A stretch of DNA of 64,000 bases from Mizuhopecten yessoensis (taxonomy: Eukaryota). Below the pieces are notes generated by a model. That model was not told the origin of the DNA and searched no databases. It saw only the letters and a program-made list of their open reading frames with translations. This document shows positions 41,601-47,600 of the stretch, piece after piece. The stretch spans positions 437,875 through 501,874 of the forward strand of contig NW_018405476.1 of NCBI RefSeq assembly GCF_002113885.1. Direction: 5' to 3'. A program made the translations under genes and the position numbers. Positions within the stretch are counted from its first letter, which is position 1. Every line of letters begins with the position of its first letter.

Positions 41601-44600
41601 ATATAGTTTTTACTTGTACTCCAAAAATCAAGTGTTCCTGAATCTACATATCATAGAATTACATGACTACCAATAAATCAATTTATATTAATAAATCATG
41701 TTAGATATAATGTGTAGGCATTATACAGAAGAAATTTTAATCGATTTGAAATTGATCACCATCATCATTTTCTGCATTAGTAGGAGAGAGGAGTTTTGAC
41801 ACATGTAAATCATTCTGCACACACAGACTGACCGTAACTCTGTCTCGAGTTCGTTTTTGCGAGCATTAGCATCATCAAGCATCGACTGTAACATGGGTGC
41901 CTGTTCACTGTTGTCCTCGGACGTCCTCAGCTTCAGCATCTTGTTCTCATGTTCCAGCCTCAGCAGCTTCTCCCTACAATTAGTGATACTATACACTTAT
42001 TTAACATATTGCATGTAAGTTAAGTCAAGACTAGCCACATCTAATCAATATAAATCGGGGTTAGGTTCGTGGAAAAGGTAGACATTCTTACCAATATTAA
42101 GCGTGTGTGATTGGGTGGGGTGATGAGTGTGTTGAACTTAATGTTTGAAAATGTTTCGACATAATCCCCTCCCCCTTTAATTTTTTTGTTTGCAATAGCT
42201 GATTCTGGACTGGTAAATACTTAATTGAGTGATACCAATTGAAAGTATGTGCTATTGGAAAAATTGGTTATGCACTGAGTCAATGTCAGTGAACCAAAAA
42301 AATAGAAGATTGAATTTAATGGTAGAAGGGAAATTACTATATCAATTTAATTATTGTTGTAATATTAGACTGTAAAGCTATCATAAACCATGTATAAATA
42401 AATCCTTGAAGCTGAAAATGGCATCAAAACTCATTCCATGAAAATTAATCCATGTTCCAGACAATACAGTTCATATGTCTGGAAAGTGGAAAGTGAAAAG
42501 TCCATTGACAGATTATGATTTTCAATATTACAAAACTATAGTCCTTTTATCAAATACTCTGAAAATACTTTGAAATACACGTCAGAACATCTGTATAATT
42601 TTATATTCGAGACAAACTTATCAGTTGGACTGACTTGACTTCTGGAGGCAGTGACAACATCTCGAGTCTGGGTGAAGTAGCGATCTGGCCGGGGTCCTCC
42701 ATGTTCTGTAGCTGTGTTAGCTTCATCTCCTCGTTGAGTTCCCTCAGCGAGTCTCTTTCCTCTGCCATCCTCTGTAGTAACATAGTACACTCATTACACT
42801 GCCATACTATATCTTTACAAGTTCTGCTATGTATATTGTTCATAAAATAATATCAAAATAACTAATTCTTGCTTCATTAAGTGGCAAAGGTAAACAAGCA
42901 AATTCGTGGAATTTATATCCCCCGCTTTCAGGACATATTGTAGGTAAACATTATTGATGTTAGGTTTAAACATGTGAGTATCGTGCTGTTGAGACATAAT
43001 GTATAGCTTGAAACTTGAAGAAAAAAAGCCTTATCTTACATTTGCTAGACTTATTAAGTGGAAACTGCAGATAATGACTCTGCCAAATGGAGTCCGATTA
43101 AAGTGGTTGTCAAACTTGGCCGAGCCCTTAATGCGTTGAACCCTGTTTCGTTATTCAAGGGACCATAACTCCGTCAAATGGGGCTCGCTGAAAGTGGTCA
43201 TCAAATTTGGCCGAGCCCTTAAGGCATTTAACCCTGTGACCAAGTTTGAAAAAAATCAGTTAACATGTGTTGTAGTTATTTCACGGAAACGAAGCGCAGC
43301 AGATAATGACGTTTTTCGTTATTCAAGGGGCTATAACTCTGCCAAATAGGGTCCACTGAAAGTGGTCATCGAACTTGACCGAGTCCTTAAGGCATTTAAC
43401 CCTGTGAACAAGTTTGAAGAAAATGGGTTGATATTTGTTGTAGTTATTGCACGGAAACGAAGCGTGACAGAGGGACAGACGGACAAACCCAAATTAATAT
43501 CCACCGTTTTGGTGAAAGCGGGGGATAATAATAAACATTACATACAATGAATGTTATCAAGTATAAGCTGCTGGAGTCAAGATTGAATCGTTTAAATCTA
43601 CATTGTTACAGATACCACCACTTGTCCTATAACTGCACCTTTGAGACTTTATTCAGTTTGTGAGCCTCACCTCCTTTTCCCGTTGAAGGGTAGACATTTT
43701 ATCCTGCGCACGCTTGGCCTCAAAGTCTGCCTTATCTGCCCGCTTAGTTTCCTCGGTGAGTTTGTTCTGTAACTCATGGACTTGACGTTTGTAGCCTTCA
43801 AGTTGTTGTTTCAGTGATGATGCCTTCCTTAACTCCTGTTGCAGAAATAAATAAAGGTATTAGTACACCAATACAATTATTGGGTAAGGAGATTCCTAAC
43901 TCCTGTTGTAGAAATAGATAAAGGTATTAGTACGCCAATACAGTTATTGGGTAAGGAGATCCTTAACTCCTGTTGTAGAAATAGATAAAGGTATTAGTAC
44001 ACCAATACAATTATTGGGTAAGGAGATCCAACGTCCTGTGGGTGGTGTTCGGTTAATGTACCAGTGGAGGAATCCGAGTTGGATACCAAAGTATTCTAGT
44101 AGAGCTCCACCAAAGGGAGGTAACTACAAGTAGGCGAGTGATGGAGCATCAACACCAGGGATTCCGTAAATGTTCTGTGAGTTTTATTAGTTTACATGTT
44201 TATGATGGTTTTGTTCTGATGACGGTTGGCCTAGCCATCCGAAACATGTAAACTAATAAAACTTACAGAACATTTACGGAATCCCTGGTGTTGATGCTCC
44301 ATCTGACTTACCTACTTTTGTTTTAACTCCTGATGGTGAATCAGCAATATTCAGTAAATTCAAGTTAAACTTATGCAAGGAAAACAATCCAGATTTCGAT
44401 TTCAGATGTCATTAGAAGGTTTGAAATTTAATTTACCAATGTATAACATTCAAGGGTAATGAAATTGCATATCACTTTAGAACTCCAGATATATAACATA
44501 AAGTTGGGAAATTTTAGATTTTGAGACAAAATTTCAGCACAGAAAAAGGTGTGTGGCACATTGTGTTTACAAGATATGTTGTTTTTGTACCTGGTACCTT

Positions 44601-47600
44601 CTCCATTCCCTTGGGGAAAGGCTCCTAGAAAGGGAAGCATGATGTGTTGAAGTCTGCCTTGTCCAGCTCAGACCCCAGCCTTAATGGGGAGGATTACGGG
44701 AGGGATTACATATCCTACTTACCTCCTCTAACTCTAGATGTTCTGTCATATACTTGGTGTTTTTCTCCTCAAGCAGCTTCACCTGGCCTCGCAGGTCACT
44801 GAGTTCATCTGTAGGTCACCAAGTACACTTTACTAATTAGTACATTAATTGAGACAAAGCCACTGATAATTTTTTTTTATTATTTTTAAATAAGTTATAT
44901 TGATTCATAGTATATATATAACATAGTTATCATTATGAAGACATACCAGATAAGATTGCCATTTAAAATAAAAAGTGCTAGTTAAAATGGGAAAAGCACA
45001 CAAGATTTTTAGAACTTACCTAATTTCTTCTTGTAAGATTCTATACTTGATTCATACTTGGACTGGCAATGAAAAACACAAAATATATATAATGCCTGAT
45101 GAAATTTACTACTTTCTTACCCTATTAATAATAATAATAAAAATAATTTGAGGATCTTATATACCGCTTTATCACACCCTAGTTCGTAAGTTGTTTCAAA
45201 GCGGTTCATAAATTATTCTGGTACGGTAAATACTTAATTAAGTGATACCAATAGAAAGTATGTGCTATTGGAAAAATGGGTCATGCACTGAGTCAATGTC
45301 AGTGAACCAAAAAATTAGAAGATTGAATTTAATGGTAGAAGTGAAATTACTATATAAATATAATTATTGTTGTAATATTAGACTGTAAAGCTATCATAAA
45401 CCATGCATAAATAAATCCTTGAAGCTGAAAATGGCATCAAAACTCATTCCATGAAAATTAATCCATGTTCCAGACAATAAAGTTCATATGTACTTGCAAT
45501 TGTAGCAATAGAGAAAAGTCTTTTGACAGATTATGATTTTCAATATTACAAAACTATAGTCCTTTTAATAAATACTCTGAAAATACTGTGAAATACGTAT
45601 CAGTACATCAGTATAATTTTATGTTTGAGACAAACTTATCAGATGGACTGATCATGACTTGACTACGTGCCTCATGTAAATGATGACCTGCGGAAATATG
45701 TGTGCTACCTTTGGATTGTTTCTATATTGCTCTGTCATTTATACTCCGCTTCGACATACACATGCTTTTGTCAACACAATGATGGAGTGTGTATGTAATG
45801 GTCATTCTGAATGGTTAAAAGTTTATTGGGAGAAGAGCGATAACTCGGTATATCCACTAGTTGGCAGTGGAGGGAATTATGAAAACACGGCTATATCCGC
45901 CAAGGGTGAGTGGAGTGTATACGAAGCGAACACTTGGATAGCGAAGATGCCTGTGACCTTGAATATAGGCGAAGGTCATTCATCCAGCATGTTATTGACC
46001 AAATACCATCATCCTGGGCCTTTCTCAACTCCCTTATTTCGGCACTCACAGCTAGCATTCTACAATTCTAGCACTGCCCAACCACGTCCTCATTTACAGC
46101 TGAGTTGACTGGAACAAGCGGAGTAAAGTATCTTGCTCAAAGATACAACACAGAGCCATGCCGTGACTCGAACCCGCAACCCTTCGGTTACGAGCCCGGC
46201 GTCCTACCACTACGACTTTCGTGCCTCCGATACAATTCCTTTAATGTTACTGCAACTTGATCAATCCACAAAATATCAGAGCAAATATATATCTGTGTAC
46301 ACTCATTAAGTATCACAACAACATTTTATAATTCCTGATATTTGTCAGTCTGTGGAGACACAACCACGACCTCATCCTTACGATATAGCTGCCCCTACAA
46401 TTTCACATGTGATGCGTCATGCCTCCACTGGGGGTTATAAAACCGAGACCTCTTGTCTACTGCTCTTCTAATTTCTAGCCTGAAGCTCTACCAAAAGAGC
46501 TAGAGATATCGAATTAGGCTGGTATTTTAACAGAGAGACACACAACAGGATATAGTGGAACACTGGACATCATTTAGCCTTGGGTCTAGCTATTCATTAA
46601 ATATCTCATTGGTTTCTCCTTAATAACAAGTTCACTGAAATTTTGACCAAGAATCAAAATGATTTGAAACTAAAATACTAAATGAAATATTTTTGTTGAA
46701 CTCTCAAGGGGATTAAAGTTAATGAGGCATAGAACAGTTGAAGAGGAGTCAACCACTATATATATACTTACGACTTGTTCTGACGTATGACGTAGGACAT
46801 CCACCTCGTCCTTTAGAGACCGTGCCTCATCTGCTATTGCCATGAGCTCCACGTTCTGACGAAAAAAAAATGTTATCAGTTTTACAATTACTGCATACTT
46901 TTTGAAATTTCCATGGGAGAGATTAAGCATGCTCAGAATCTTAAAATGTGTGTATGTACGACATAGGGAAAAATTACTTTTTAAAAAGCATCTTACTTTT
47001 TAAAAAGCATCTTTTGAGCTGTTCTTTCAGGTGAAATCATCAGATCTTAGAAAATAGGAATGTTTAAGCAAATTCACTGGTGGAAAATGCTCAATTTAAG
47101 GGGCTAAAATCAGGAGTTTCCCTCCAAAATGGGGAGATTCGGTAAGTATGCATCAGGGAAAAATAAGTTACACACAACAATGTACATCTACTGACTTAAA
47201 TACCCAATAAACTCAAGTAATAACATATGAAATGAACAATTGTCCAAGAGTCATAACACAAAATCACCTGGATTTTTTCATTTTTCTTTCTTTTAGAAAA
47301 TACATTTTTTCTGAAATTCACTTACTTTTTGTTTGATTTCAGAAAAATCTCTTGCTAGAAGTTCAGACTTTATTTTCAAATCATCTCGACCTGCAATGAA
47401 GTGTTATTAATTTAAGTATATTCCATCTTTATTTATAGCTCACATGAAAATAATGAAGAGCACAAACCATGCCATGACATTGTCGGTATATGATAATATT
47501 AGAATATGTGTATTCATAAATGATCAGTGGCATGTATTTAGATCAAGAAAACAAATAGTGATAGAGCTTAGTTAGTAAACTTTATATCTGAAGACATCAT

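What the first reader, a model, noticed from the sequence alone, without database searches (positions are those of the whole stretch)
44208..44262. Self-cleaving hammerhead ribozyme hidden in a Hook intron (antisense)
Seen: core CUGAUGA (44216-44222) plus one inserted C, helix II GGUUGGC/GCCAUCC, GAAA (44241-44244), palindromic ACAUGU in place of a stable helix III, cleavage triplet GUA (predicted cut after 44250), and helix I GUUUUGUU pairing with AAC(UAAU)AAAAC, whose bulge overlaps an AAUAAA. Established: minimal type I hammerheads with palindromic helix III are typical of Penelope-like pLTRs and related retrozymes, and often cleave as dimers. Inference: this marks a ribozyme-bearing retroelement family in this genome; a single copy may cleave weakly or need a partner in trans.
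Basis: partly seen in the sequence, partly recalled or inferred. Interest (0 to 1): 0.85.

Follow-up and report, generated by a model that had tools for sequence, protein, structure and literature searches.

The report
Penelope-type minimal hammerhead in a foldback insertion
The motif is a real, intact copy of the "minimal" hammerhead ribozyme that Penelope-like retrotransposons carry near their 3' ends. It sits at the tip of a head-to-head double insertion inside a Hook intron, where it is probably inert, so it is a correct but ordinary find.

Summary
The two core boxes alone are not beyond chance in 64 kb. A covariance model built from 40 other genomic copies, without this one, finds 44208-44258(+) at 76 bits, E about 1e-17.

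The architecture is the published Penelope-like-element "min-HHR" (PMC4209133):
- 7-position helix II
- an unpaired C between A9 and G10.1
- a G10.1-C11.1 pair
- palindromic ACAUGU in place of helix III
- a short open helix I

The family has about 55 dispersed copies plus one array. It keeps the core while helices I and II change compensatorily between subfamilies. At one locus the module follows a reverse-transcriptase/GIY-YIG ORF on the same strand.

The window copy is one half of a head-to-head pair of 5'-truncated copies (43839-44322, 10-bp target duplication), a known Penelope insertion layout. It lies antisense in an 887-nt Hook intron. Its 69-nt arms form a -132.6 kcal/mol hairpin that buries the ribozyme. 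RNA-seq shows no transcript of this copy and no cleavage ends.

The scan has already noted Penelope-type and inverted hammerhead pairs elsewhere in this genome. Verdict: new member of a known kind, low interest.

The parts
44208..44262 (+). Complete minimal hammerhead (helix I 5' strand, core, helix II, GAA, palindrome, GUA, helix I 3' strand)
   Evidence: Leave-one-out CM R1 gives 76.1 bits, E 1.1e-17, for 44208-44258.
44216..44223 (+). Core box C3-A9 (CUGAUGA) plus the unpaired C between A9 and G10.1
   Evidence: The unpaired nucleotide is a stated hallmark of PLE min-HHRs (PMC4209133). It is C in 35 of 41 aligned copies (6 differ: 3 T, 2 A, 1 shifted by a gap).
44224..44240 (+). Helix II: 7 positions (6 standard pairs and one U.U) closed by loop CUA
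   Evidence: Family pair counts show position 4 as U-A in 22 copies and A-U in 12.
44241..44250 (+). G12-A14, palindromic ACAUGU (A15.1 to U16.1) and A17. The predicted cut is after 44250.
   Evidence: In the family alignment A13, A14 and A15.1 never vary, and the palindrome is 93% paired.
44140..44208 (-). Left arm: inverted 5'-truncated second copy of the same tail. It keeps only the 3' part of a hammerhead and has no CUGAUGA box.
   Evidence: Inverted repeat I1. R1 gives only 21 bits for 44185-44249(-), with the core box missing.
44235..44303 (+). Right arm of the foldback. It overlaps the 3' half of the hammerhead and its downstream tail.
   Evidence: Hairpin MFE -132.6 kcal/mol, z -22.
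43839..44322 (.). Whole insertion: two head-to-head 5'-truncated Penelope-like tails. The left one is longer and carries a 67-bp triplication at 43826-44027.
   Evidence: Homology to other copies runs from about 43974 to 44319. Tail sequences recur in other loci. Repeat family D1.
43829..43838 (+). Target-site duplication, left copy (TTAACTCCTG)
   Evidence: Direct-repeat family D2. Sequence read.
44323..44332 (+). Target-site duplication, right copy (TTAACTCCTG)
   Evidence: Direct-repeat family D2. Sequence read.
43836..44722 (-). Hook intron (887 nt) that contains the insertion. The hammerhead is antisense to the gene.
   Evidence: The splice joint 43835|44722 is seen in all four RNA runs. 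The flanking exons 43671-43835(-) and 44723-44806(-) match Pfam HOOK profile positions 161-215 and 133-160.

Best explanation
The motif is an intact copy of the minimal (dimer-type, type I) hammerhead that canonical Penelope-like retrotransposons carry in the 3' region of their RNA.

The 484-bp insertion at 43839-44322 consists of two 5'-truncated copies of that 3' tail joined head to head. The outer ends are the element's 3' ends and the junction lies just upstream of the ribozyme. I infer, but have not shown, that this layout arose because the element's GIY-YIG nuclease nicked both target strands and both nicks primed reverse transcription.

In source elements the ribozyme would work when two copies pair through the ACAUGU palindrome to build a 6-bp helix III, or when a neighbouring palindrome in a tandem supplies it. 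This too is inference.

At this locus the motif is a passenger:
- there is only one complete copy
- it is antisense to Hook
- it is locked in a 69-bp-arm hairpin
- it is not detectably transcribed from its own strand
For: Structure. The motif matches the published min-HHR point by point: long helix II, short helix I, an unpaired nucleotide between A9 and 10.1, G10.1-C11.1, and palindromic 15.2-16.2 (against PMC4209133).

Family.
- The arm pattern occurs 116 times in the genome, against 0 for the reversed control.
- The hammerhead pattern occurs 82 times, against 0 for the control.
- Of 96 arm-anchored copies, 45 keep both core boxes with at most 1 mismatch each, and 27 keep them exactly.
- In 41 aligned copies, 77% of cells pair, against 24-44% when the partners are slid. 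No shuffle out of 500 reaches the observed covariation score. Helix II position 4 is U-A in 22 copies and A-U in 12. Helix I position 1.4 appears as U-A, G-C, G.U and A-U.
- The cleavage triplet is GUA or GUC, depending on the subfamily.
- The leave-one-out CM gives E 1e-17 for the window copy.

Link to Penelope-like elements.
- L030 94-975 is an ORF with a GIY-YIG domain. Its relatives carry RVT_1 plus GIY-YIG. Two hammerhead modules follow it on the same strand.
- The copy at L020 835-1602 starts in the same 3' UTR and ends with the module, between A-rich flanks.
- A second GIY-YIG hit lies about 840 nt upstream of another module on the same strand.

Layout. 5'-truncated copies with an adjacent inverted 5'-truncated copy are described for these elements (PMC8557442). 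The element's protein cleaves and extends both strands in vitro (PMC11167929). 14 of the 81 fetched loci carry both arms.

Inertness.
- Forcing helices I and II costs 21-32 kcal/mol, and their pair probabilities are at most 0.0004.
- No reads fall on the arms of this copy.
Against: - No Rfam hammerhead model reports the motif, either here or in the tandem array.
- No cleavage has been shown. Reads from two paralogous loci run uncut across GUA|AAC.
- Helix II has a U.U mismatch, and helix I has only three contiguous pairs in this copy.
- The covariation rests on a few subfamily-level changes shared by related copies, so the counts overstate the number of independent events.
- I saw the ORF only from the end of the RT onward, at one locus. 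The modules there could be nested insertions into the 3' UTR repeats and not the element's own end.
- No full-length element with pLTRs was recovered.
Confidence: 0.85

Rival explanations
1. The element is a MITE-like DNA transposon (terminal inverted repeats plus a target duplication) that happens to carry, or once captured, a hammerhead-like loop. The retroelement link would then be secondary.
For: - Near-perfect 69-nt inverted arms and a 10-bp direct duplication flank the insertion.
- 14 of the 81 fetched loci carry both arms.
- No long ORF lies in or beside most copies.
Against: - Most copies have one arm only, with variable 5' ends as expected of 5' truncation.
- The inner junction of the two arms differs from copy to copy.
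- The module lies downstream of a GIY-YIG/RT ORF on the same strand at two loci.
- Inverted 5'-truncated partners are a documented Penelope feature.
Confidence: 0.07
2. The hammerhead resemblance is a chance match inside an AT-rich hairpin repeat.
For: - The two-box pattern appears in 21 of 100 shuffles of the window.
- Rfam finds only sub-threshold miRNA-hairpin matches.
Against: - The core is kept across subfamilies whose spacers and arms differ, with compensatory helix changes.
- Features not searched for (the extra nucleotide, G10.1-C11.1, the palindrome) all match the published family.
- CM E-value 1e-17.
Confidence: 0.03
3. What matters at this locus is the long perfect hairpin in the Hook pre-mRNA and not the ribozyme. 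It could be a substrate for small-RNA production or RNA editing that affects Hook.
For: - The hairpin folds equally well on the gene's strand (Rfam miRNA-hairpin matches on both strands).
- MFE -132.6 kcal/mol.
- It lies inside a spliced intron.
Against: - All miRNA matches fall below the gathering scores.
- No reads cover the arms in four RNA runs.
- No small-RNA libraries were examined.
- The hairpin is explained by the insertion mechanism without invoking any function.
Confidence: 0.05

Closest known systems
Minimal hammerhead ribozymes (min-HHR) of metazoan Penelope-like elements (Cervera & De la Pena 2014, PMC4209133)
   Same: - Core boxes
- Unpaired nucleotide between A9 and 10.1
- G10.1-C11.1
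- 7-position helix II
- Short open helix I
- Palindromic stand-in for helix III
- Many consensus subfamilies per genome, with compensatory changes
- Inverted pairs 100-700 bp apart, and mostly solitary truncated copies
   Different: - This is a scallop-type genome and a low-copy family (tens of copies, not thousands).
- Here the two inverted copies abut directly, so the ribozyme sits in the loop of a perfect hairpin.
- Helix II carries a U.U mismatch in this subfamily.
Poseidon element of Anolis carolinensis and its protein-assisted hammerhead (PMC11167929)
   Same: - RT plus C-terminal GIY-YIG element with a hammerhead in the repeat region
- Both target strands are cut and extended, which offers a route to head-to-head copies
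- RNA-seq there also showed no ends at the ribozyme site
   Different: In Poseidon the ORF starts inside the ribozyme. Here the ATG inside CUGAUGA runs into a stop after 10 codons, and the module lies downstream of the ORF.
Animal non-LTR retrozymes (type I hammerhead tandem repeats of about 170-400 nt giving circRNAs, PMC7229834)
   Same: - Type I hammerhead with a weak palindromic helix III that works in tandem
- Proposed to derive from Penelope pLTRs (bioRxiv 10.64898/2026.07.22.740005)
   Different: - The window holds a single copy, not a tandem.
- The only tandem in this family (L031) has a 48-nt unit, far below described retrozyme sizes, and most of its units carry a core mutation.
- No circRNA evidence exists.
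Rfam Hammerhead_1 / Hammerhead_3 families
   Same: Same catalytic core and three-helix junction.
   Different: No hit at E<=10. The extra nucleotide, the missing helix III and the short helix I probably account for this, though I did not test that.

Membership tests
PLE-type minimal hammerhead (min-HHR) | Conserved core CUGANGA ... GAAA with an NUH cleavage triplet | tested here: met
   CUGAUGA at 44216-22, GAAA at 44241-44, GUA ending at 44250.
PLE-type minimal hammerhead (min-HHR) | Unpaired nucleotide between A9 and 10.1, and a G10.1-C11.1 pair | tested here: met
   C44223. G44224 pairs with C44240. Both are listed as family hallmarks in PMC4209133.
PLE-type minimal hammerhead (min-HHR) | Long helix II (7-8 bp) and short open helix I (4-5 bp) | tested here: met
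   Helix II has 7 positions with one U.U. Helix I has 3 contiguous pairs, then 5 more after a 4-nt bulge. The family consensus is 4-5 pairs.
PLE-type minimal hammerhead (min-HHR) | Palindromic 15.2-16.2 / loop 3 allowing a dimeric helix III | tested here: met
   ACAUGU at 44244-49. The palindrome is 93% paired across 41 copies. The array consensus 54-mer folds into the three-way junction at -14.9 kcal/mol.
PLE-type minimal hammerhead (min-HHR) | Consensus subfamilies with compensatory changes in the helices | tested here: met
   29 cells changed on both sides (1 of 500 shuffles reaches this); covariation score 0.115 against 0.074. The copies are related, so few independent events underlie these numbers.
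PLE-type minimal hammerhead (min-HHR) | Residence in the repeat / 3' region of an RT + GIY-YIG element | tested here: met
   Met at family level only: L030 ORF plus downstream modules, the L020 truncated copy, and a second GIY-YIG neighbour. No full-length element was recovered.
PLE-type minimal hammerhead (min-HHR) | Self-cleavage at the predicted site | not testable with these tools
   RNA reads show no pile-up of ends and run uncut across the site in two paralogues. Short products would be lost from such libraries.
Rfam hammerhead families (RF00163, RF00008 and relatives) | Score at or above the family's gathering threshold | tested here: not met
   No hammerhead match at gathering, nor at E<=10 on 701 nt or on the array.
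Animal non-LTR retrozyme | Head-to-tail repeats of about 170-400 nt, each with a type I hammerhead, expressed as circRNA | tested here: not met
   There is one complete hammerhead in the window. The only array has a 48-nt unit. circRNA was not tested.
MITE (non-autonomous DNA transposon) | Constant terminal inverted repeats on all copies, with uniform ends | tested here: not met
   Most copies have one arm and variable 5' ends.
miRNA precursor families matched by Rfam (MIR7996, MIR831 and others) | Score at or above gathering | tested here: not met
   83.4 bits against 119, 59.8 against 100, and so on. These are generic long-hairpin matches on both strands.

The most novel reading that the evidence does not exclude
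The 48-nt, 36-copy tandem array of this same hammerhead (L031 2107-3837) could be a working miniature retrozyme.
- Each unit, with the palindrome of its neighbour, folds into a complete type-III-like hammerhead.
- The array is transcribed.
- Cleavage followed by ligation would give 48-nt RNA circles, about a quarter the size of any described retrozyme.
- Rolling-circle reverse transcription of such circles would explain why short hammerhead arrays recur in this family.

The window copy would then be a relic of that system.
Probability: 0.08. Interest if true: 0.55.

Novelty: new member of a known kind. Interest (0 to 1): 0.22.

Why it matters
It adds a bivalve family to the catalogue of Penelope-type minimal hammerheads. 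It also gives a clean example of the head-to-head insertion layout with the ribozyme exactly at the junction, which fits the both-strand priming seen in vitro. It does not change what is known about hammerheads or about Hook.

Two side observations may be of more use than the ribozyme itself: the target duplication that re-created the Hook splice acceptor, and the 48-nt hammerhead array.

Tried and rejected
- Rfam at gathering and at E<=10, on the locus and on the array: no hammerhead hit, only sub-threshold miRNA-type hairpin matches.
- Coding potential of the tail: a 59-codon open frame at 43947-44123(-) was searched genome-wide. Its relatives carry stops and none sits in a long frame, so it is not coding.
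- The ATG inside CUGAUGA, which is the start codon in Poseidon, meets a stop after 10 codons here (read).
- A 1294-codon 'ORF' in L113 is an artefact of an assembly gap read through as N.
- ORFs near two same-strand arm pairs (L112, L114) are unrelated. One is PP2C.
- RNA reads gave no start or end pile-up at 44250/44251 and no coverage of this copy. This cannot exclude cleavage, because short products are lost from such libraries.
- No cross-species comparison was possible, because the genome collections on hand hold only bacteria and archaea.

Full report
**1. The observation**

- helix I 5' strand at 44208-44215
- CUGAUGA at 44216-44222
- one extra C at 44223
- a 7-position helix II (44224-44230 with 44234-44240, loop CUA)
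- GAAA at 44241-44244
- the palindrome ACAUGU at 44244-44249
- A17 at 44250
- helix I 3' strand at 44251-44262, containing AAUAAA

Two things were missed. The third pair of helix II is U.U. The motif sits at the tip of a 69-nt-arm, 96% complementary inverted repeat (44140-44208 / 44235-44303) that extends to about 44128-44316. That repeat folds at -132.6 kcal/mol, z = -22.

The two core boxes alone are not significant in 64 kb: 21 of 100 shuffles give a match. No Rfam hammerhead model reports the site, even at E<=10. Whether it is real therefore had to be decided from related copies.

**2. The family**

The window is part of a 988-Mb, 82,659-contig assembly.
- The arm core occurs 116 times with at most 2 mismatches. 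The reversed control gives 0.
- The hammerhead pattern occurs 82 times, control 0. About 27 of those lie in one array.

I fetched 80 loci chosen by the arm alone. Of 96 arm copies, 45 have both core boxes within 80 nt upstream with at most one mismatch each, and 27 have them exactly.

The copies fall into subfamilies whose spacers and ends differ, while the ribozyme is kept.
- Helix II reads GGUUGGC/GCCAUCC, GGUUGGC/GCCAACC or GGUAGGC/GCCUACC.
- Helix I reads AACC/GGUU, AACU/GGUU or AACAA/UUGUU.
- The cleavage triplet is GUA or GUC.
- The extra nucleotide after A9 is C in 35 of 41 aligned copies.

On the 41-copy alignment:
- 77% of cells form standard pairs, against 24-44% with slid partners.
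- Helix II position 4 is U-A in 22 copies and A-U in 12.
- No shuffle out of 500 reaches the observed covariation score.

Because the copies are related, these counts reflect a few subfamily-level events and not many independent ones.

A covariance model built from the 40 other copies finds 44208-44258(+) at 76.1 bits, E 1.1e-17. The only other hit below E 0.1 is the truncated remnant on the opposite arm.

**3. What kind of hammerhead**

Cervera and De la Pena (PMC4209133) defined the 'min-HHR' of metazoan Penelope-like elements by exactly these traits:
- helix II of 7-8 bp
[quoted passage not shown] - a conserved G10.1-C11.1 pair
- palindromic 15.2-16.2
- many covarying consensus families per genome
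- mostly solitary truncated copies, with some pairs on opposite strands 100-700 bp apart

They saw no cleavage of single motifs and only weak cleavage of dimers in vitro.

The 'inserted C' that looked like a defect is therefore a family hallmark. The failure of the Rfam models probably comes from this extra nucleotide, the missing helix III and the short helix I.

**4. Link to a Penelope-like element**

Among 149 scored GIY-YIG matches in the genome, two lie on the same strand as a hammerhead module: one about 570 nt upstream of it (contig C4844), the other about 840 nt upstream of its arm (contig C76692).

The C4844 locus was already in hand.
- L030 94-975 is a 293-codon ORF, open from the locus start, with a GIY-YIG domain.
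- Its 43 relatives carry RVT_1, PF26215 and GIY-YIG. The best is from the scallop Ylistrum balloti.
- About 500 nt of 3' UTR with roughly 60-nt repeats follows, then two hammerhead modules.

A separate copy (L020 835-1602) begins in that same 3' UTR and ends with the module, between A-rich flanks. Another subfamily has a discrete 5' end about 525 nt upstream of the ribozyme.

Together these say the module is the 3' part of a Penelope-like RNA and that most copies are 5'-truncated. At C4844 the modules could also be nested insertions.

**5. The layout in the window**

The insertion spans 43839-44322 and is flanked by a 10-bp direct duplication, TTAACTCCTG (43829-43838 and 44323-44332).
- The right copy (+) begins a few bases upstream of helix I and runs to about 44322.
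- The left copy (-) begins inside helix II's 3' strand, so it lacks CUGAUGA.
- The left copy runs on for about 370 nt, through a tail that recurs at other loci and a 67-bp triplication (43826-44027).

The outer ends are thus the element's 3' ends, and the inner junction is the two 5' truncation points. Craig et al. (PMC8557442) describe this layout: 5'-truncated copies, often with an inverted 5'-truncated copy adjacent, forming inverted repeats. The Poseidon protein cuts and extends both target strands in vitro (PMC11167929), which gives a plausible route. That route is inference, not shown here. 14 of the 81 fetched loci carry both arms.

**6. Gene context and activity**

Four RNA-seq runs show the splice joint 43835|44722 with GT..AG on the - strand. 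The two flanking exons match consecutive parts of the Pfam HOOK profile, positions 133-160 and 161-215. The insertion is therefore inside an 887-nt Hook intron, and the complete hammerhead is antisense to Hook. The Hook pre-mRNA carries only the truncated remnant.

No read covers the arms of this copy. Reads on the 40-nt core differ at 44223 and 44240 and continue into the flanks of a paralogue on contig C4843. Six reads in one run show the unit-to-unit joint of the 48-nt array. All of these cross GUA|AAC uncut, and no pile-up of ends is seen.

Folding of 44120-44320 gives helix I and II pair probabilities of at most 0.0004. Forcing those helices costs 21-32 kcal/mol. This copy is best read as an inert passenger.

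**7. The array**

Contig C2575 holds 36 copies of a 48-nt unit that is this hammerhead plus a 5-nt loop closing helix I, flanked by the same inverted arms.

The consensus from one ACAUGU to the next (54 nt) folds by minimum free energy into a three-way junction with hammerhead topology at -14.9 kcal/mol. Helix III there is built from two successive palindromes.

Only 6 of 33 parsed units keep both boxes, and 16 have A9 changed to C. Most of the array therefore looks like neutral amplification of a mutated unit. Shorter arrays of 34-37-nt partial units without a cleavage site occur at other loci.

Described animal retrozymes are about 170-400 nt (PMC7229834).

**8. Verdict**

It is a new member of a well-described kind, probably inactive at this site.

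The scan had already noted Penelope-type hammerheads and inverted pairs elsewhere in this genome. That did not affect the score, which rests on the tests above.

Noticed in passing
window 43829-43838 and 44323-44332 (with 43836-43846 and 44330-44340): The 10-bp target duplication contains the Hook acceptor CAG plus the first 7 bases of the exon. The element landed 7 nt inside the exon, and the duplicated acceptor at the far end now restores the normal mRNA. All four RNA runs use the distal acceptor (joint 43835|44722). The insertion lengthened the intron by about 490 nt instead of breaking the gene.
   Followed up: partly
window 43826-44027; also G000 contigs C2665:482860-485708, C76709:265654-266660, C4717:158653-159697: The 67-bp triplication next to the foldback is made of the element's tail plus the duplicated exon start, giving three spare acceptor-like sites. 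The same tail module of about 63-67 nt forms kilobase-scale tandem arrays at other loci.
   Followed up: partly
L031 2107-3837 (G000:C2575:141906-143636): This is a 36-copy tandem of a 48-nt unit, each a complete minimal hammerhead, flanked by the family's inverted arms. Six reads in one RNA run cross the unit joint. Most units carry A9 changed to C.
   Followed up: partly
L113 3680-3890 (beside an assembly gap) and L059 about 560-690: Tandem arrays of 34-37-nt partial hammerhead units lack the palindrome and the cleavage site, so they cannot be kept for catalysis. This suggests the region is prone to slippage or template jumping.
   Followed up: no
window 44305-44332 (- strand): Read on the Hook strand, the outer end of the element is AG|GTAAGT, a strong donor-like site 18 nt after the old acceptor. 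Used together they would make an 18-nt micro-exon ending in an in-frame TAG. No reads support its use. The same GGTAAGT end is conserved in most copies of the family.
   Followed up: partly
L030 1126-1470 and 1798-2086: Tandem repeats of about 60 nt lie in the 3' UTR of the Penelope-like ORF and flank both hammerhead modules. The modules may be the element's own end or nested self-insertions.
   Followed up: no
L110 about 400-540 (G000:C4843:274765): A solitary paralogue of the hammerhead module is transcribed in one RNA run (about 20 reads). The reads run uncut through the predicted cleavage site.
   Followed up: partly
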